In this document: positions 3,066-46,605 of the stretch, one piece after another | How positions within the stretch are numbered: position 1 is the first letter of the stretch | Layout of the letters: every line of letters starts with the position of its first letter | DNA from: Antechinus flavipes | Lineage: Eukaryota | Reading direction: 5' to 3' | NCBI RefSeq assembly: GCF_016432865.1 | Contig: NC_067401.1 | Span: 132,618,001-132,682,000 of the forward strand | Length of the DNA stretch: 64,000 nucleotides | Position numbers and translations under genes: made by a program | The notes under the pieces: model-generated | The model's input: the letters and a program-made list of their open reading frames with translations, nothing else | Told to the model about the DNA's origin: nothing | Databases searched by the model: none

Positions 3066-4572
3066 CCTAACTTTTGGGATAAGAATTCATTATTTGATAA
3101 AAACTGCTGGGATAACTGGAAATTAGTATGGCAGAAATTAGGCATGGACCCACACTTAACACCATATAACAAGATAAGATCGAAATGGGTCCATGACTTA
3201 GGCATAAAGAATGAGATTATAAATAAATTGGAGGAATATAGGATAGTTTATCTCTCAGACTTGTGGAGGAGAAAGAAATTTGTGACCAAAGATGAACTAG
3301 AGACTATTACCGATCACAAAATAGAAAATTTTGATTATATCAAATTAAAAAGGCTTTGTACAAACAAAACTAATGCAAACAAGATTAGAAGGGAAGCAAC
3401 AAACTGGGAAAACATCTTCACAGTTAAAGGTTCTGATAAAGGCCTCATTTCCAAAATATATAGAGAACTGACTCAAATTTATAAGAAATCAAGCCATTCT
3501 CCAATTGACAAATGGTCAAAGGATACGAACAGACAATTTTCAGATGATGAAATTGAAACTATTACCACTCATATGAAAGAGTGTTCCAAATCATTATTGA
3601 TCAGAGAAATGCAAATTAAGACAACTCTGAGATACCACTACACACCTGTCAGATTGGCTAAGATGACAGGCTTCCTGAATTTGAACTCATCTAATTTTGA
3701 TTTTGACACCAATGTCAGTTTCCTATTGGAAGGGATGCGGGAAAACTGGGACACTGATGCATTGTTGGTGGAACTGTGAACGAATCCAACCATTCTGGAG
3801 AGCAATCTGGAATTATGCCCAAAAAGTTACCAAATTGTGCATACCCTTTGATCCAGCAGTGTTTCTATTGGGCTTATATCCCAAAGAAATACTAAAGAAG
3901 GGAAAGGAACCTGTATGTGCTAAGATGTTTGTGGCAGCCCTGTTTGTAGTGGCTAGAAACTGGAAATTGAATGGATGCCCATCAATTGGAGAATGGCTGG
4001 GTAAATTGTGGTATATGAATGTTATGGAATATTATTGTTCTGTAAGAAATGACCAGCAGGATGAATATAGAGAGGACTGGCAAGACTTACATGAACTGAT
4101 GCTAAGTGAAATGAGCAGAACCAGATCATTATACACTTCAACAACGATATTGTATGAGGATGCATTCTGATGGAAGTGGATTTCTTTGACAAAGAGACCT
4201 GAGTTTCAATTGATAAATGATGGACAGAAGCAGCTACACCCAAAGAAAGAACACTGGGAAACGAATGTGAACTATCTGCATTTTTGTTTTTCTTCCCAGG
4301 TTATTTTTACCTTCTGAATCCAATTCTCCCTGTGCAACAAGAGAACTGTTCAGTTCTGCAAACATATATTGTATCTAGGATATACTGTAACATATCTAAC
4401 ATATACAGGAGGGGGTTGCCATCTAGGGAAGGGGGTGGAAGGAGGGAGGGGAAAAATTGGAACAGAAATGAGTGCAAGGGATAATGTTGTAAAAAAAATT
4501 ACCCTGGCATGGATTCTGTCAATATAAAGTTATTATTAAATAAAATAAAATAAAATATTAAAAAAAAGAAAA
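3066..4572 (+). mobile_element. 5'-truncated LINE-1 (ORF2 C-terminus, 3' UTR, A-rich tail)
   Basis: ORFs 3144-3779 and 3697-4170 translate as the L1 ORF2 C-terminus (MDPHLTPY.KI.SKW, REMQIKTTLRYH.TP.R.A, CWWNC...QPFW); G-rich 3' UTR tract and A-rich tail. Start is approximate and no TSD was found. Confidence 0.93.
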
Positions 4573-10305: not shown

Positions 10306-10770
10306 ATGTCTTGCTGCAACACCTGCTCCACCAGCTTCTGTGGTTTCCCCAGTTGTTCTACTGGAGGGAACTGTGGATCTAACTGCTGTCAGGACAGCTG
10401 TGGAACTAGTTGCTGCCAACAGGGTGGCTGTGGAAGCAGCTGTGGTGCTAGCTGTGGAACCAGCTGCTGCCAACAGGGTGGCTCTGGGATCAGCTCTGGG
10501 GCTGGCTGTGCACCTCCTTGTGAGACCACTTGCACAACCAGGTGTTACCAACCCCCATGCTGTGGATGTGAGAGCTGCCGCACCAGGTGGTGTCGGCCAG
10601 ATTGTAGAGTTGAAGGAACCTGCCTGCCATCTTGTTGTGTGGTTAGTTGCACTCCCCCATCTTGCTGCCAGCTGCATCATGCCCAGGCTTCTTGCTGCCG
10701 CCCATCCTACTGTGGTCAGTCTTGCTGCCGTCCAGCCTGCTGCTGCTACTGCTGTGAACCCACCTGCTAA
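10306..10770 (+). CDS. KRTAP1: Keratin-associated protein, KRTAP1 family, copy A (154 aa)
   Basis: Intact ORF; N-terminal TSFCGFPSCS and the KAP1 C-terminal domain RWCRPDCRVEGTCLP.CCVVSCTPPSCCQLHHAQASCCRPSYCGQSCCRP.CCC; TATAAAA at 10223; AATAAA at 10979 and 11030. Confidence 0.95.
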   Translation: MSCCNTCSTSFCGFPSCSTGGNCGSNCCQDSCGTSCCQQGGCGSSCGASCGTSCCQQGGSGISSGAGCAPPCETTCTTRCYQPPCCGCESCRTRWCRPDCRVEGTCLPSCCVVSCTPPSCCQLHHAQASCCRPSYCGQSCCRPACCCYCCEPTC

Positions 10771-12127
10771 AAACCAATTTACAAATTTTATGGCTGAGAT
10801 ATGATTTTGAAATTGACTAAGTACTCACAAACTCTTGGATTCCAAAGAAATTTCAAGTCTATCAATTTTCTAACCTGAAACCTTCATCTGACTTCCTGTT
10901 ACTGGAAATGTTTTAAAAACCCAAACTTGGAATCCATTGATATGCCGAGACACTTGGGAATCCCCAGACAAAAAGAGAAATAAAATATCTTAACAACCCA
11001 TTAGAATATCTCCTCTTCTTTGATTCAAAAATAAATTTTAAGTTTTCCTTGCACAGCTATTCTTGGTTTCATGATTTCTTAAATCATACTTGTCAGTAAA
11101 GGATTAAAAAAAAAACAACTTCTAATAAATATGGCATGGCAAAATGTTTTTTCTAATTATTATTGAGAAGATACTCATTTAAATTTTTATTTCATTTAAA
11201 GTTGAAATTTGTTTGCTTGAATATGCTTGTTTCAAAGATCTTGTTTTTCTCTTTCTCCTCCAAGGGGAGAAAAAAGTGCTTGTTAATTAAAAAAAAAATT
11301 TTGAAAGCAGAGGGAAAGCAACTAGAAGATAGGAAGAGATTAAATACGAATAAAAGCTTGCGGATCATAGAGGGGATCATCTGCTGGAGAAATGAGATTT
11401 AATAGGATGTGGAGAGTTTTGCCTTAACAAAGAAAAGAGTTACCACTCCATATGAGAAAGAAGTAAGGGAAGACATAGTTACAGAAAGGATGTAGGTGGT
11501 ATAAGAAGAGGAGGAGAAAAAGAGAGAGCTCTTGGCAAATAGCCTCAGTGTTTTTTAGTAAAACATAAGACAAAGTTTTCATTTGAGGCAGTGAGAGAGG
11601 GGGAGTTTTAAGGACGTTCAAAAAGATTTGGAAGATCCAGATGTGGTGAGTAGAATAATATCCATCCCTATCTCTATCAAGAATCCCACCATTTTTTAAA
11701 CTTTATTTTTTTTACTTTTTGAACTTTAACTTCAATAAGCAAGAAAAATTCTCTATAAAAAGAACAAAAAGCAATGATTTTATGTGAAATTGTAAACTTC
11801 CATATTATATACGTTGAATTTTTAACATGTACATTAAATTGAACCATTAACATGATACTGCCTGTATTCCCTGTTTGTATCTACTTCTGAACTTTTTGTG
11901 CTCCTGTGTATATTTTTAGTATTTCTTTTTCTTCCTTTTTTCTTTTGAAATCCTCCCTTGTACTAAGTTATAGTCAGTAAAACATATTCACACAATGTAT
12001 TTGAAAAGGTAAATTTTATTCAGTACCTTTAATCTACAACCTCTCTCCAAAGAGATTTGGCGAGGTAAGGAAAGGGGAAATCACCATTCCTTAAGTTACT
12101 TGAACTTCAAAGCCTAAGAATCATTCT

Positions 12128-12274
12128 TTTTTTTTTTTCCTGTGCAATTGGGGTTAAGTGACTTGCCCAGGTTCACACAACTAGGAAGTGTTAAGTATCT
12201 GAGATCATATTTGAACTCATGTCCTCCTGACTTTGGGGCTGGTGCTGTATCCACTGCACCATCTGATTTCCCCC
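12128..12274 (-). mobile_element. WSINE1-type SINE with 12-bp TSD
   Basis: Poly-T followed by the reverse complement of a tRNA-derived CORE SINE; TSD AAGAATCATTCT (12116-12127) / AAGAAGCATTCT (12275-12286). Confidence 0.85.
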
Positions 12275-12497
12275 AAGAAGCATTCTCAATCATTATCCTA
12301 CCACCATCACCTTGTCTGATTCAGTCAGTTGCCAAATCTTGATAGTTCCATTTCTTTAGCATCTTTTATATTTGGAGTCTTCTCTAGTCACAATAGAATC
12401 ATGTAGCCCAGGCTCTTATCATCTCTTACCTAGACTATTGGAGGAGCCTCCTAAGTGGTCTCCTTGAATCTAGATTCTTTCCTTAAGAACAAGTATG

Positions 12498-13788
12498 TGC
12501 TAAGTGAAATGAGCAGAACCAGGAGATCATTATATACCTCAACAATGATACTGTTTGAGGATGTATTCTGANNNNNNNNNNNNNNNNNNNNNNNNNNNNN
12601 NNNNNNNNNNNNNNNNNNNNNNNNNNNNNNNNNNNNNNNNNNNNNNNNNNNNNNNNNNNNNNNNNNNNNNNNNNNNNNNNNNNNNNNNNNNNNNNNNNNN
12701 NNNNNNNNNNNNNNNNNNNNNNNNNNNNNNNNNNNNNNNNNNNGATCTCTTCGATAAAGAGAGCTAATTCAGTTTCAATTGATCAAGGATGGACAGAAGC
12801 AGCTACACCCAAAGAAAGAACACGGGGAAATGAATATAAACTGCTTGCATTTTTGTTTTTCTTCCCAGGTTATTTATACCTTCTGAATCCAGTTCTCCCT
12901 GTGCAACAAGAGAATTGTTCGGTTCTGCATACATATATTGTATCTAGGATATACTGTAACCTATTTAACATGTAAAGAACTGCTTGCCATCTGGGGGAGG
13001 GGGTAGAGAGAGGGAGGGGAAAAATCAGAACAGAAGTGAGTGCAAGGGATAATGCTGTAAAAAATTACCCTGGCATGGGTTCTGTCAATAAAAAGTTAAA
13101 AAAACAAACAAACAAACAAACAAACAAAAAAGGCTTAGCCCAGCTTGTCAACCTATTAAGTTCCTGGATTTTAATTGCCAAAACTGACTTGATGTTAAAA
13201 AGCAATGATCAAAAAATGAGTGAATAGAGTGAATAGAGTTCTGGATCTGGAGTCAGTAAGACCCAAGTTCAAATCCAACCTCAGATACTTGTTAGTTGTG
13301 TGACTCTAGCTGAGAAAACCCAATTTCTTCATCTCTGAGGATAATATAACATCTGCCTCCCAGGGTTGTTGTGAGGATCAGATTAGGTACTTGAAATTGC
13401 TTAGCACAGTGCCTGCATATATATATATGTTCACTATTATTGTAAGTGTCATGGAAACTCAAGGAAGAGAGAGTATCCTGGTCAGCAATATCAACATTGA
13501 GATTTGGTCATGATCAGGACTGATAAAAGACTTTCAGTTTAGCGATTTATAAGATTATAATTTTGTAGAGAGACTCTTAAGCCCCTCTTTTAATATGGTT
13601 GCATCTTCTAGTGCATGAGTTTGTTCAGCTGAGCTGTCATTTCTTCTGCTTCTCAGTTGTTATAAGGATAACGCTCATTGCTTCTTCATACTGATTGAAA
13701 TACACAAGTTCTTTTCATGTATTGAGCATACATCTAGTAATAAAATGCAATTGACTCCAGAAGATTTTGGCAACTGAAAAAAAAAAAA
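12498..13788 (+). mobile_element. 5'-truncated L1 with 3' transduction, bounded by 13-bp TSD AAGAACAAGTATG
   Basis: L1 3' end 12498-13131 (contains the N gap), non-L1 segment 13132-13776, AATAAA 13739, poly-A 13777-13788; TSD at 12485-12497 and 13789-13801. Confidence 0.85.
12572..12743. other. Assembly gap (172 N) inside L1
   Basis: N run. Confidence 1.
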
Positions 13789-13964
13789 AAGAACAAGTAT
13801 GAAAATGTAAATGTATATGTTGCTCAAGTAAGAAAATGGAACTCCTCTGGATCAAAAAACTTCAGAAAAAACCTCTTACTTGGAGGTTAAAATAGAAATT
13901 CTTCTATTTGTCATTAAATCCCCTCTTAATCTTCAGTCTCTTTTTCCAGACTGATTACAATAAT

Positions 13965-14149
13965 CAGGGGTCCTCAAACTACGGCCCGTGAGCAGATTTT
14001 GCAGCTGAGGATGTTTATCCCCTTCACCCAGGGCTGTGAAGTTTCTTTATTTAAAGGCCCACAAAACAAAGTTTTTGTTTTTACTATAGTCCGGCCCTCC
14101 AATAGTCTGAAGGACAGTGAACTGGCCCCCTATTTAAAAAGTTTGAGGA
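13965..14149. mobile_element. Non-autonomous hAT (OposCharlie1/OC1-like) MITE
   Basis: Left TIR CAGGGGTCCTCAAACT; right end ...AAAAAGTTTGAGGA retains 10 nt of the TIR; internal TACGGCCC and GTGAACTGGCCCCCT motifs. Family name from memory. Confidence 0.75.
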
Positions 14150-16401
14150 TCTTCCTTTTTTTTACATCATCCTGTCAAAATGACATACTTACTATTATTC
14201 ATGTTATGATATTCCACCTCTGGCTCCATATGCCTCCAAAGATTTCCTCTAATGCTTGCAGTGCTCTATTTTCTTATCTTAGCCCCCTTCAAGATTCATC
14301 TAAATTACCACATCCTTCATGAGGTCTTTCTGGATTCCTCTAGTTGTGAGTGGCCCTTTCTCCATCACTTTGAGTGTGCATACACACACATATATTTGAT
14401 TTCATAAGCTTATCAGTAAAATATTTTTTAGCATGCACTCCCAGTATGTGTACTTTTACTTGTTCATAAATTAAATATTTGTATTTCTGTACTAATAATT
14501 ATGCACATTATTAAACTTGCACAAAATAGAAATTTTAAAAAGATGAGATAAAGATGATACCGATTTGATCCTAGAGTTAACTGGAGTCAATAGAGTTTAT
14601 TGAATTGAAGAGTGTCATAGTCAAGTCAGCACTGAAATAAAATTATTTTGACAATTGTTTGGAGGATGTATTAGAGTGAAGGAAGACAAAGTAGGAGAGC
14701 ATTGTGATTGTCCAGAGAAGAGGTGATAGGGACCTCAATGAATTGTGGAGAATAAATGTGGGAGGGGAGAAAAAGAGGTATTATGGGAAAGATTAGAAGT
14801 AAAAACAACAAAATCTGATAACTGATTGGCTACTTGGAGTGAAAGAGAGTGAGGGAAAATGAAAAGAAGGTTATACCCAAAATGATACTAAAAACGATAA
14901 TCTGGATCATTGAAAAGATTGTAGTAATTAAAAGTCTGCAAAAAGTGTGGGTTTGGGGGAAAAAGGCATTGGAATGAGATCCAAGATCTGTTGCAGCTTG
15001 CTGCTTTCTATCCCAAATTGAAGAAAGAAGGAAAAGGGTCTCTTCTCTGTCTGTCAGTACACAGAAGCAAAGAATTAGCCTTCTGTGTAAATGCTCACAG
15101 CATCCAGTCATAAAATGATCTGGAGGAATAAAGGAGAGGTCTGGTGGAAGGAGGTAGGAGAGAGATTTACCTAATGGCACCTGTGCAGCTACTACTAAAT
15201 ATAAATTCCTGGATAGGAGTTTGATTATCATTGCTCTAAGAAGCTAAAGCCCAGCCTGGAAGGGGAAAGCTTGGTAGCTTTTACAGAAAAGAGAAGTGAA
15301 AAGTAGGGGAATCTTGAGAGAGAAGCATAAGTGTGATTGTATTTATGGGTTCTAAATTTGGCTGTGGCAGAGAGGATAAAATGCAGACTATATTCCCATC
15401 CTGTTTAGCTCGTGACATATTCCTTAGAATCTTGTCACAGACCCAATTTGGTCAGGCAATGTTCTAGCATGAGATCTGAGCCCCTACTTTAAAGACTGCA
15501 GTTGTTAATCAATCTGACATCCAGACATCAGCTTCCTATGACACTTATACATGCCAGGAATTAAATAAATAAAAGGCTAAATTACTGCCTTAATTTAACC
15601 CAAGAAAAAGGAAAATCTCTACGCATTGTACCTTTTTGATCCAATTAAATGAATGATTTGAAAAAATGGACTTAATATCAAGAGTAAGAATCCATCATTA
15701 AAAAACAAAGCCATTTTTCTCTGATTAATCACATCCTAGAATCCATCTTTCCAAAACAAAGCTGATCACATATGTGTAGTAGTCAAAATTTGACTTCACT
15801 CAGATTAAATTTTTCTCCATATCCCTGCTTTTGGAAGCACTGAACTTTAGGATGTTTAAAAAAAATATGAGGGGACCACAGAGATCACCCAAGCCTTCTG
15901 CTACTCATGAATTATTCCCTTTTGGCATTAGAAATATAAGTTCATTAAGGACTGAGATTATTTCATTTTTCTCTAAGCAACTTGCATGTTACTTTGCACA
16001 TACTGAGAACTTAATAAATCTTTGTTGTTCTTATTGAATTGGCTGATAATTTCCTTGAAGTTGTGAAGTCTAGTCACCCCCAAGGATTTTGGTGTAAGAT
16101 ACATAATTATGTTCCACTAGTTCTTAATTTTTCATCTCTCCAGGTGTATGCCTACCTAGCTCTTCTGGGTAAAGGCTCTTAAAGCAAAAGATTAACAAGT
16201 CCCACACCAGATCATTTAAGCGTTTATTGAAGCTTTTATAAAATTAACTTTTCTTCTGCTGGCTTCCAAAATAGTTAATTTGTCAAAACAGGGTCCCTGG
16301 CACCCAGCCAAAACTCCAAGTTTCAGATCTTCTTTGATAAAAAAAAGTCCCCCACCTATGACTCCCTATACTAATAGCATTATAGATATGGTGTGTGAGC
16401 A

Positions 16402-16439
<38 letters not shown>

Positions 16440-17116
16440 TAAACAATGATGTTCAATAAGCTCTCTGCTCGCCATAAAAAAGAAGAAAAAAGCAGACATA
16501 GAGAATACTTGTCATACTCATATGTTTCTCTTGGAATTATAGTTTTCAAAGAGGAAGGGAGTAGAATCATCAGTGTGTAGAGTGCCCTTTTGAAATCTCC
16601 CTTCATAGATGCAGATCTTCAGTTCCTGTTAGTTTTTGTCTACTTTCTGTAGAGTTTCCTAAGGGAAATGAGAGGCTAAGTAATGATAATAATAAAAATA
16701 ATAATTAATAGTATCACTTATATAATGCTTCAAGGTTCATGAAACACTTTACTACATTGTCTCATTAATCCTTACAACAACCTTGGGAAGTGGATGCAAT
16801 TATTATCTTCATTTTAGAGATGAGGAAACTGAGGCAAACAGGTTGTTATTTGCCTAAGGTCACACAGCTAGTAAGAGTCTGAGATCAGATTTTAATTTGG
16901 TTCTTGCTGATTCCAGGTCCAGTGCTCTATCTACTGTACCACCTACTATAATGTACTATAATAAATAATATAATATACCTATAATATGGAATAATATAAT
17001 ATATATTACCATAGTTTGATATGGCATATTATAAAATGTAGTGTCATATAATGTCATATAACCATCATTTCTATATCACCTTAAAGTTTGTGAAGCATTT
17101 AAAAAATACCATTATT

Positions 17117-17256
17117 GGGGCAGTGGATAGAGCCCCAGTCCTGAATTCAGGAGGACCTGAGTTCAAATATGACCTCAGACACTTAACACTTCCTAGCTGT
17201 GTGACCCTGGGCAAGTCACTTAACCCCAATTGCCTCAGCAAAAAAGCTAAAAAAAA
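17117..17256 (+). mobile_element. WSINE1-type SINE
   Basis: GGGGCAGTGGATAGAGC...GAGTTCAAAT...CTAGCTGTGTGACCCTGGGCAAGTCACTTAACCCCAATTGCCTCAGC plus A tail; short deletion in the A-box region. Confidence 0.85.
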
Positions 17257-18148: not shown

Positions 18149-18595
18149 ATGGCCTGCTGCAACTCCTGCTGCAACTCCTGCTCCACCAGCTTCTGTGGTT
18201 TCCCCAGTTGTTCTACTGGGGGAAATTGTGGGTCTAGCTGTTGCCAAGATAGCTGTGGGACGGGCTGCTGCCAACAGGGAGGTTGTGGAACCAGCTGTGG
18301 GATCAGCTCCGGGACTGGCTCTGGGGCTGGCTGTGCACCTCCTTGTGAGACCACTTGCACAACCAGGTGTTACCAACCCCCATGCTGCGGATGTGAGAGC
18401 TGCCGCACCAGGTGGTGCCGCCCAGACTGCAGAGTTGAGGGTACTTGCCTGCCACCTTGCTGCGTGGTCAGCTGCACTCCTCCATCTTGCTGCCAGCTGC
18501 ATCATGCCCAGGCTTCTTGCTGCCGCCCATCCTACTGTGGACAGTCTTGCTGCCGTCCAGCCTGCTGCTGCTATTGCTGTGAGCCCACCTGCTGA
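18149..18595 (+). CDS. KRTAP1: Keratin-associated protein, KRTAP1 family, copy B (148 aa)
   Basis: Intact ORF with the same KAP1 signatures; TATAAAA at 18077; nearest clear AATAAA about 19131. Confidence 0.95.
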   Translation: MACCNSCCNSCSTSFCGFPSCSTGGNCGSSCCQDSCGTGCCQQGGCGTSCGISSGTGSGAGCAPPCETTCTTRCYQPPCCGCESCRTRWCRPDCRVEGTCLPPCCVVSCTPPSCCQLHHAQASCCRPSYCGQSCCRPACCCYCCEPTC

Positions 18596-26809: not shown

Positions 26810-28260
26810 GGGGAAAGTTTTGGGTCAATATTCATTAGGAAAATTTATGCATATATTTCTTTATTTTCACTCTTGCTGATTTAGATATCAGTGTATTTGA
26901 GTCATACAAGGAATTTGCTAAGGTTTTTTATTTATCTTTTTTTTTCTCATATAGTTTATAGCATTGGAATGGATTGTTTTTTTAAGTGTTTCATATAATT
27001 TATTTGTGACCATCTGGTCTTGGGAATTTTTTCTTAAGTAGTTCAGTTATGGTTTGTTCAATTTATTTTTGCAAGATACGGTTATTTAAATATTGTATTT
27101 CTTCTGCTTATCTTGACAATTTATATTTTTGTAAATATTCATCCATTTCACCTAGATTTCAAATATATTGGCATATAATTTGGCAAAGTAGCTGCTAATA
27201 ATTGTTTTAATTTCATTTTCATTTGTGATGTATTCATCTTTTTTTCATTTTTGATGATGGTTATTACTTTTTCTTTCTTTTTAANNNNNNNNNNNNNNNN
27301 NNNNNNNNNNNNNNNNNNNNNNNNNNNNNNNNNNNNNNNNNNNNNNNNNNNNNNNNNNNNNNNNNNNNNNNNNNNNNNNNNNNNNNNNNNNNNNNNNNNN
27401 NNNNNNNNNNNNNNNNNNNNNNNNNNNNNNNNNNNNNNNNNNNNNNNNNNNNNNNNNNNNNNNNNNNNNNNNNNTTAAACAATAGTTTATCTACCTAAAA
27501 GTAGTTCTTAGTTTTATGTTTTAGTTCAATGGTTTTCTTACTTCCAATTTTGTTTAATCTCTCATTTAATTTTCAGGGCTTTTAAGTTAATGTTTCACTG
27601 GAGATTTTTAAACTAATCTTTTTCTAGTTTTTTTTTTTAAATTTCATGTCCAATTCACTGATCTGTTCTTTTTTCCATTTTACTTATGTAAGCATTTAGA
27701 GATATAAATTTCCCTGTCAGTACTTCTTCGGCTGCATCCCATAAATTTTGATACAATGTCTCATTATCATTATCTTTAATGAAATTAGTTATTCTGTTTT
27801 TTGTTACTTTTCTCACTTTTGCTTTAGTATTAGAATATTAGTTTCTAATTAATTTTTATCTACATTTCCTTGGGTCTTTATTGAACATGTTTATTGCATT
27901 ATGTATTTTAAAAAGATGTATTTATTATTTCTGCTCCTTTGCTTTTCTTTATGAGGTTTTGGTGACCTAATTCATTATCAATTTTTGAGCTGTACAGCTG
28001 AGAAAAAGATATATTCTTTTCTGCTCCCTTCCATTTTTCTCTTGAAGTTTGTCATATCTAACTTTTCTAAAATTCTATTCTATTACCTGTTTCTTCCTCA
28101 TTTAACTTTTTCCTAAAGAATTTAAATAATACTTCATTTGGTGAATATGTTTATTATTGATATTACTTCATATATCTATGGTAGTATTTAATAAGTTGCA
28201 GTTTCCCTGCTTATTTCTTTTGATTAGATCTACTTTTGATATATAACAAGTTTTATGTTT
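26810..28260 (-). mobile_element. Old L1 ORF2 (EN/linker) fragments spanning an N gap
   Basis: Strongly T-rich, with antisense L1 motifs (CCATCTGGTCTTGGG, GCTGCATCCCATAAATTTTG). Confidence 0.65.
27285..27474. other. Assembly gap (190 N)
   Basis: N run. Confidence 1.
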
Positions 28261-46420: not shown

Positions 46421-46605
46421 NNNNNNNNNNNNNNNNNNNNNNNNNNNNNNNNNNNNNNNNNNNNNNNNNNNNNNNNNNNNNNNNNNNNNNNNNNNNNNNN
46501 NNNNNNNNNNNNNNNNNNNNNNNNNNNNNNNNNNNNNNNNNNNNNNNNNNNNNNNNNNNNNNNNNNNNNNNNNNNNNNNNNNNNNNNNNNNNNNNNNNNN
46601 NNNNN
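46421..46605. other. Assembly gap (185 N) within a purine-rich simple repeat
   Basis: N run flanked by GAG/GAA/GGAA repeats. Confidence 1.

What the first reader, a model, noticed from the sequence alone, without database searches (positions are those of the whole stretch)
12485..13801. L1 3' transduction: about 645 bp of non-L1 DNA inserted between two KRTAP1 genes
Seen: an exact 13-bp TSD (AAGAACAAGTATG, 12485-12497 and 13789-13801) at a TT/AAGA endonuclease-type site. It encloses a short L1 3' end with its own AATAAA and A/(CAAA)n tail (to 13131), then non-L1 sequence (13132-13776, including a MIR piece), a second AATAAA (13739) and a second poly-A (13777-13788). Established: this two-tail layout inside one TSD is the signature of read-through past the weak L1 poly-A signal. 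Inference: DNA from another locus was imported into the KAP cluster, and it tags the source L1.
Basis: partly seen in the sequence, partly recalled or inferred. Interest (0 to 1): 0.72.

Follow-up and report, generated by a model that had tools for sequence, protein, structure and literature searches.

The report
Ordinary L1 insertion carrying flanking DNA
A truncated L1 jumping-gene copy in the yellow-footed antechinus landed between two hair-keratin-associated genes and most likely brought about 645 bases of DNA from its parent locus; this by-product of L1 copying is well known, and the parent locus could not be searched for here.

Summary
AAGAACAAGTATG occurs exactly twice in the window (12485-12497, 13789-13801), at a TT|AAGA L1-endonuclease-type site. 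It brackets, in order:
- the last 23 codons plus stop of L1 ORF2, then the L1 3' UTR;
- AATAAA at 13087 and an A7(CAAA)6A3 tail ending at 13131;
- 645 bp of non-L1, non-coding DNA holding a CORE-SINE/MIR piece;
- AATAAA at 13739 and a pure A12 tail.

Both sides of the N gap are colinear and in the same orientation on the nearest L1 copy in the window, which implies about 8 missing bases, not 172. The duplication pairs across the gap, which argues against a mis-join.

The best reading is a single L1 3' transduction event (about 0.75). Rivals are weaker:
- L1 inserted into an older retrocopy: no duplication flanks the L1 alone.
- Second insertion into the L1 tail: only a 7-bp AAAAAAG repeat at a non-consensus nick site.
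- Template-switch chimera: the polarity is wrong and no small RNA is present.

L1 3' transduction is already published for a dasyurid. The scan's first readers noted similar layouts elsewhere in this genome, all unchecked. Ordinary; low interest.

The parts
12485..12497 (.). Left copy of the 13-bp target-site duplication AAGAACAAGTATG; target site reads TT|AAGA
12498..12571 (+). 5'-truncated L1: last 23 codons of ORF2 plus the TGA stop at 12569-12571
   Evidence: 91.5% identical to L1 copy 4100-4170, whose ORF (3697-4170) ends at the same stop
12572..12743 (.). Assembly gap (172 N) just after the ORF2 stop. The flanks are colinear on L1; the nearest copy implies about 8 bases
   Evidence: the published L1-1_SH 3' UTR is 415 nt including the tail. 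Letters not filled or looked up
12744..13097 (+). L1 3' UTR up to the canonical end ...GTCAATAAAAAGTT, with the L1's own AATAAA at 13087-13092
   Evidence: 89% identical to 4179-4532; signal position
13098..13131 (+). Internal A-rich tail A7(CAAA)6A3; under the favoured reading this is the source element's tail as encoded in its genome locus
13132..13776 (+). 645 bp of non-L1, non-coding DNA (the presumed transduced flank). It holds a CORE-SINE/MIR piece (core 13233-13303, probably running to about 13420) and AATAAA at 13739-13744, 32 nt before the tail
   Evidence: no other copy in the window; CORE-SINE alignment; no credible Rfam family (one sub-threshold chance hit) and no significant Pfam match; signal position
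13777..13788 (+). Terminal pure poly-A (12 A)
13789..13801 (.). Right copy of the target-site duplication
10306..10770 (+). Upstream keratin-associated protein gene (154 aa, Keratin_B2); its stop codon is 1,715 bp before the insertion
18149..18595 (+). Downstream paralogous keratin-associated protein gene (148 aa, Keratin_B2)

Best explanation
This is a single L1 retrotransposition event with a 3' transduction.

Inferred steps. At some other locus of the Antechinus flavipes genome, an L1 of the L1-1_SH type was transcribed past its own AATAAA and its genome-encoded A7(CAAA)n tail. Transcription ran on through about 645 bp of downstream DNA, which happened to hold an old CORE-SINE/MIR. The RNA was cleaved and polyadenylated about 32 nt after the next AATAAA. 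L1 ORF2p then nicked the bottom strand at 5'-TCTT/AAGG-3' between two keratin-associated protein genes and primed on the new poly-A. It copied the flank, the old tail and the L1 3' UTR, and stopped 23 codons before the ORF2 stop. Second-strand cleavage 13 bp away produced the duplication.

Shown: the anatomy, the duplication, the nick site, the two signals and two tails, and L1 colinearity across the gap.
Not shown: the read-through origin and the existence of a source locus.

The insert lies in sense orientation 1.7 kb downstream of one single-exon gene and 4.3 kb upstream of the next. No functional effect is expected.
For: - The exact 13-bp duplication encloses the whole composite and occurs nowhere else in the window. 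Shuffles give 0.2 expected matches even with one mismatch allowed over both strands. At the one position that counts, directly after the A-run, chance is about 1e-7.
- The target site TT|AAGA fits the L1 endonuclease preference TT|AAAA with one mismatch (plus my own knowledge).
- The 5' part is a genuine sense-oriented L1 3' end, 89-91% identical to another copy and ending at the same ...GTCAATAAAAAGTT.
- There are exactly two AATAAA hexamers, each just upstream of an A-tail.
- No direct repeat of 6 bp or more flanks the L1 alone.
- The internal tail is a patterned (CAAA)6 microsatellite while the terminal tail is pure A12. This fits an internal tail copied from a genomic template and a terminal tail added to the RNA.
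- The 645 bp has no small-RNA family, no protein-domain signal and no L1 similarity.
- Base rate in the same marsupial family: 94 of 1,141 candidate somatic L1 insertions in Tasmanian devil tumours carried 3' transductions, from 35 source elements in one lineage.
Against: - No second copy of 13132-13776 was found or sought genome-wide, because no tool here can do so. The defining feature of a transduction is therefore untested.
- The layout is also produced by a second retrocopy landing in the L1's tail, or by retroposition of a host transcript that contains an old L1 fragment.
- A 7-bp AAAAAAG repeat (13126-13132 and 13785-13791) could be read as an inner duplication.
- The cleavage site lies 32 nt after the hexamer, at the upper edge of the usual 10-30 nt spacing.
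- The L1 5' end is missing, so the source element's own duplication cannot be recognised at 13132.
Confidence: 0.75

Rival explanations
1. Two successive events. A truncated L1 inserted first and made the 13-bp duplication. Later a 5'-truncated, polyadenylated retrocopy of some other RNA (645 bp) inserted in the same orientation at the very end of the L1's A-rich tail. Its own short A-rich duplication is hidden in the tails.
For: AAAAAAG is present both at 13126-13132 and at 13785-13791, so a 7-bp inner duplication running into the first 3 bases of the outer one is possible. A-rich tails are known to attract L1-type insertions (my own knowledge). The 645 bp ends with its own AATAAA and poly-A, as a retrocopy would.
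Against: The implied nick site is AC|AAAA on the top strand (bottom strand TTTT/GT). It lacks the /AA of the L1 endonuclease consensus. The canonical site in an L1 tail lies at its start (GTT|AAAAAAA, 13095-13104), not its end (plus my own knowledge). Six of the seven repeated bases are A and carry no information. The terminal A-run is only 12 A, which would have to hold the new tail, the inner duplication and the remnant of the old tail. The prior is low: non-L1, non-SINE retrocopies are far rarer than transductions.
Confidence: 0.08
2. Retrocopy of a host (non-L1-promoted) transcript whose 3' part happened to contain an old sense-oriented L1 3' fragment with its tail, followed by 645 bp up to the transcript's poly-A site. 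It was mobilised in trans and 5'-truncated inside the L1 fragment.
For: It gives exactly the same layout within one duplication. The L1 part is only 89-91% identical to its nearest copy in the window, so it could have been a fossil already when it was copied.
Against: L1 proteins strongly prefer their own RNA in cis (my own knowledge). Sense L1 3' ends inside the last roughly 1.1 kb of host transcripts are uncommon. The 645 bp shows no coding or exon signal.
Confidence: 0.05
3. Template-switch chimera made in one event. Reverse transcription started on the poly-A of a 645-nt non-L1 RNA, reached that RNA's 5' end, and jumped onto the tail of an L1 RNA.
For: One duplication encloses two polyadenylated modules. 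L1 and other LINE reverse transcriptases do switch templates (PMC4476161).
Against: Described chimeras have the opposite polarity: a small RNA, mostly U6, at the 5' side and the L1 or mRNA 3' end at the 3' side, with no A-tail between them. The mechanism appears limited to a few snRNAs. No credible Rfam family lies in 12744-14400 (one sub-threshold hit at E 0.67). The internal tail is a (CAAA)6 pattern followed by only a few pure A, not an RNA poly-A.
Confidence: 0.04
4. Assembly artefact: the contigs on either side of the N gap come from different L1 copies and were mis-joined, so the composite does not exist.
For: The gap sits inside a high-copy repeat, and its stated length (172) disagrees with the L1 model (about 8 bp).
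Against: The left contig carries one copy of the 13-bp duplication and the right contig the other, in the exact positions expected, and the 13-mer occurs nowhere else in the window. The flanks are colinear and on the same strand. Each contig carries one of two paralogous Keratin_B2 genes of one cluster.
Confidence: 0.03

Closest known systems
L1 3' transduction (Moran 1999; Goodier 2000; Pickeral 2000; Szak 2003; cited from reference lists, papers not read here)
   Same: One target-site duplication at an endonuclease-type site encloses an L1 3' end with its own signal and tail, then unique DNA, then a second AATAAA and poly-A. The L1 is 5'-truncated.
   Different: Nothing in the anatomy differs. 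The source locus has not been identified, so membership rests on layout alone.
Somatic L1 3' transductions in Tasmanian devil transmissible cancers (Stammnitz et al., bioRxiv 10.1101/2022.05.27.493404)
   Same: Same marsupial family (Dasyuridae) and same mechanism. Those authors used the unique transduced tags to identify 35 source L1s.
   Different: Those are somatic tumour insertions called from reads. This one sits in the germline reference assembly of Antechinus flavipes, and its age is unknown.
L1-1_SH, the youngest L1 family described in dasyurids (Gallus et al. 2015, PMC4408412)
   Same: A 3' UTR of about 400 nt after the ORF2 stop, 5'-truncated copies, and duplications of 5-15 nt. L1-1_SH insertions mark the younger dasyurid branches, including the lineage of A. 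flavipes.
   Different: I could not align against the consensus because it is not on hand. The family assignment is inferred from layout and host.
U6/L1 and related template-switch chimeric retrocopies (Buzdin 2002 and 2003; Doucet et al. 2015, PMC4476161)
   Same: Two RNA-derived modules inside one duplication at an L1 endonuclease site.
   Different: Here the L1 is the 5' module, a 34-bp A-rich tail separates the modules, and no snRNA is present.

Membership tests
L1 3' transduction | A single target-site duplication encloses the whole composite (L1 + tail + foreign DNA + second tail) | tested here: met
   Exact 13 bp at 12485-12497 and 13789-13801, the only two occurrences in the window; not extendable
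L1 3' transduction | Insertion at an L1 endonuclease-type site (top strand TT|AAAA-like) | tested here: met
   tcctt|AAGAAC = TT|AAGA
L1 3' transduction | The 5' module is a sense-oriented L1 3' end with its own poly-A signal and A-rich tail | tested here: met
   89-91% identical to L1 copy 4100-4532, with the same ORF2 stop and the same end; AATAAA at 13087; tail 13098-13131
L1 3' transduction | The 3' module is non-L1 DNA ending in a poly-A signal 10-35 nt before a terminal poly-A | tested here: met
   No L1 similarity within the window; AATAAA at 13739-13744 and A12 from 13777, spacing 32 nt
L1 3' transduction | A second genomic copy of the 3' module lies directly downstream of a source L1 and continues past the cleavage site without poly-A | not testable with these tools
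ORF look-ups, the metagenome scan and the findings index were all blank. No marsupial genome search is on hand
L1 3' transduction | An empty site with a single AAGAACAAGTATG in relatives that lack the insertion | not testable with these tools
   The orthologue route gave only Petaurus, without DNA. There is no paralogous empty site in the window
Template-switch chimeric retrocopy (U6/L1 type) | A small RNA (U6, U6atac and similar) or other RNA forms the 5' module and is fused directly to the L1 or mRNA 3' end as the 3' module | tested here: not met
   L1 is the 5' module, a 34-bp A-rich tail lies between the modules, and no credible Rfam family is present (one sub-threshold hit, 19.8 bits against a gathering score of 60)
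Nested second retrocopy in an L1 tail | The inner element has its own target-site duplication at an endonuclease-type site | tested here: inconclusive
   Only AAAAAAG (7 bp, six of them A) at 13126-13132 and 13785-13791; the implied nick AC|AAAA is off-consensus
L1 inserted into an older retrocopy | A target-site duplication flanks the L1 module alone | tested here: not met
   No shared word of 6 bp or more between 12465-12505 and 13095-13160

The most novel reading that the evidence does not exclude
The composite is a reverse-polarity template-switch chimera. L1 reverse transcriptase primed on an unrelated 645-nt polyadenylated RNA and then jumped onto the tail of an L1 RNA. This would place the L1 at the 5' side, an arrangement not among the chimera types described in the work read here. 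It would be shown if the 645 bp has its only genomic source in a discrete transcription unit starting at the base equivalent to 13132, with no L1 upstream.
Probability: 0.04. Interest if true: 0.4.

Novelty: new member of a known kind. Interest (0 to 1): 0.15.

Why it matters
It matters little in itself. L1 3' transduction is a textbook by-product of L1 copying and is already documented in a dasyurid.

If the source locus were found, the 645-bp tag would identify one L1 progenitor in Antechinus flavipes. That would be a small data point in the question of how long L1 stayed active in dasyurids. Gallus et al. 2015 found no intact L1 in the devil, while Stammnitz et al. 2022 found ongoing somatic activity.

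The insertion also makes a clean presence/absence marker for antechinus phylogeny. No effect on the neighbouring keratin-associated protein genes is expected.

A practical by-product: the 172-N gap is probably only about 8-40 bp.

Tried and rejected
There is therefore no read or contig evidence on depth, a second copy or an empty site.
- An exact-protein look-up of a 56-aa ORF inside the 645 bp was not on record. Note that the reference translates the TTG start as L.
- A word search with the 63-aa ORF spanning L1 end, tail and flank found no candidates. Non-coding ORFs of this genome are evidently not in that collection.
- A metagenome scan for a 25-mer of the 645 bp gave 0 hits. This was expected and says nothing.
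- The findings index searched by sequence and by relatives was blank, which means nothing for this genome.
- Orthologous loci through the two Keratin_B2 genes: exact look-ups returned only this assembly. The proteins are not in the cluster collection. The nearest relative found is Petaurus at 76% identity, and its DNA could not be fetched.
- A paralogous empty site downstream of the duplicated gene was sought but not found.
- Rejected: an L1 inserted into an older retrocopy (no duplication around the L1), a chance 13-mer, and a coding or small-RNA origin for the 645 bp.
- Papers on human base rates (Pickeral 2000, Szak 2003, Tubio 2014) are not held. They are cited only through other papers' reference lists.

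This was unintended.
- One search used a local BLAST database, built, that still held those places as subject. It was replaced by a masked copy.
- No query of mine contained those letters.
- L001 and L002 are this same assembly region. They were fetched only to identify the genome, and their gap region was not read.

Full report
**What is there.** The window is part of chromosome CM028220.1 of assembly GCA_016432865.2. A paper lists that accession as Antechinus flavipes, a dasyurid marsupial. The 13-mer AAGAACAAGTATG occurs at 12485-12497 and 13789-13801. It occurs nowhere else in the window on either strand, even with one mismatch allowed; shuffles give 0.2 such matches over the whole window. 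The two copies cannot be extended by a single base on either side, so they are not part of a longer duplication. The second copy directly follows a pure run of 12 A. The pre-insertion site reads tcctt|AAGAAC. That is TT|AAGA on the top strand and 5'-TCTT/AA-3' on the nicked strand, one mismatch from the L1 endonuclease preference (the consensus is from my own knowledge).

**The gap, tested first.**
- Left of the N run, 12498-12571 aligns at 91.5% to 4100-4170 of another L1 in the window. That stretch is the end of its ORF2 (ORF 3697-4170). Both stretches end in the same stop codon, which in the focal copy sits at 12569-12571, directly before the gap.
- Right of the gap, 12744-13097 aligns at 89% to 4179-4532 of the same copy, which is its 3' UTR down to the shared end ...GTCAATAAAAAGTT.
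- Order and strand are preserved on all four L1 copies tested. The nearest copy has 8 bases between the two matches. Two more diverged copies imply 38 and 46. A fourth alignment was too short to trust.
- Independently, the published dasyurid L1-1_SH consensus has a 3' UTR of 415 nt including its tail (PMC4408412). The focal copy already shows 354 + 34 known bases after the stop.
- The 172 N are therefore very probably an over-estimate, and the insert is about 1.13 kb long.
- The join is also vouched for by the duplication itself, because one copy lies on each contig.

**The two modules.** The L1 module carries AATAAA at 13087 and a 34-bp tail, A7(CAAA)6A3, at 13098-13131. The next 645 bp (13132-13776) behave as follows:
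- They match nothing else in the window except a 70-bp CORE-SINE/MIR core at 13233-13303, which is shared with three dispersed copies.
- They have no credible Rfam family; the only hit is a snoRNA model at 19.8 bits against a gathering score of 60, E 0.67.
- Their ORFs are all 63 aa or shorter and match no Pfam family significantly.
- They hold the only other AATAAA of the region at 13739, 32 nt before the terminal A12.

The flanking genes at 10306-10770 and 18149-18595 are paralogous Keratin_B2 genes. 'KRTAP1' is a reasonable but unproven subfamily label, since the nearest named relatives are annotated KRTAP9-3-like or KRTAP1-3-like.

**Mechanism.** The duplication encloses both modules, so the 645 bp came in by L1-type target-primed reverse transcription and was not resident DNA. 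Five scenarios give this layout.

1. Read-through of a source L1 into its 3' flank, that is a 3' transduction.
2. A second retrocopy landing at the end of the L1's tail.
3. A trans-mobilised host transcript that contained an old L1 fragment.
4. A template-switch chimera.
5. An L1 inserted at the 5' edge of an older retrocopy.

Scenario 5 is rejected: no repeat of 6 bp or more flanks the L1 alone.

Scenario 4 has the wrong polarity and an A-rich tail between the modules. Described chimeras put a small RNA, mostly U6, at the 5' side and fuse it directly to the L1 3' end, and the mechanism seems limited to a few snRNAs (PMC4476161). No small RNA is present here.

Scenario 2 is possible. AAAAAAG occurs at 13126-13132 and again at 13785-13791. 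However, six of those seven bases are A. The implied nick AC|AAAA lacks the /AA of the endonuclease consensus. The canonical site in an L1 tail is at its start, not its end. And only 12 A are available to hold a new tail, an inner duplication and the old tail's remnant.

Scenario 3 cannot be separated from scenario 1 without the source locus. It is disfavoured by L1's preference for its own RNA in cis (my own knowledge).

Scenario 1 needs no special pleading. It also explains why the internal tail is a patterned microsatellite while the terminal tail of the same insertion is pure A: the first was copied from a genomic template and the second was added to the RNA. This argument is only suggestive, because normal cleavage inside a source tail can also transmit a pattern.

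The base rate supports scenario 1. In Tasmanian devil tumours, 94 of 1,141 candidate L1 insertions carried 3' transductions, traced to 35 source elements in one lineage. I put scenario 1 at about 0.75.

**What could not be done.** The defining test is a second copy of 13132-13776 directly 3' of an L1 elsewhere in the genome, together with an empty site in related species. It needs a search of marsupial genomes or reads.
- The look-up of sequencing runs found 22 holders in 8 studies. Three organisms hold 57-87% of the sampled words and four hold 21-36%.
- Work-arounds through ORF look-ups, a metagenome scan, the findings index and orthologues of the Keratin_B2 genes all came back empty.
- The window holds no paralogous empty site.

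**Comparison with what is known, and verdict.** In anatomy this is a textbook L1 3' transduction. Four of the six defining features were tested and met, and two could not be tested. The phenomenon is long established in human and mouse, and it is published for a dasyurid. L1-1_SH insertions are known to mark the younger dasyurid branches, including the lineage of A. flavipes.

The scan's first readers have noted similar layouts at several other places in this genome, none of them checked. This fits a common, ordinary process.

It is a new instance of a known kind, with no expected effect on the neighbouring genes. Its main uses would be as a tag for one L1 progenitor and as a presence/absence marker. 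Interest 0.15.

Noticed in passing
window 12572-12743, 27285-27474, 46421-46605: The window has three N runs of 172, 190 and 185 bases. For the first, L1 colinearity implies only about 8 bases missing (38-46 from the more diverged L1 copies), so the estimated gap sizes in this assembly may be systematically too long.
   Followed up: partly
window 3144-4560: A longer L1 3' portion with broken ORF2 pieces (211 aa and 157 aa ORFs) ends in a degenerate tail of the form TTATTATTAAATAAAATAAAATAAAATATTAAAAAAAA. It lies just downstream of the Keratin_B2-like gene at 2296-2751. It is 89-91% identical to the focal L1 and served as the yardstick for the gap.
   Followed up: partly
window 10306-10770 and 18149-18595: The two tandem Keratin_B2 paralogues (154 and 148 aa) are nearly identical in their C-terminal two thirds, but their flanks are not alignable. 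Nothing beyond a SINE-like repeat matches between the regions downstream of the two genes. Either only the coding part has been kept alike, or the duplication is old and the coding part was homogenised.
   Followed up: no
window 12127-12261 and 17116-17254: An inverted pair of SINE-like repeats, 87% identical over 139 bp, straddles the insertion site region at a distance of about 5 kb. They are probably two copies of a dasyurid SINE family.
   Followed up: no
The tool describes this as a filter that also trips by chance. They were not examined further and were not sent to any search on purpose.
   Followed up: no
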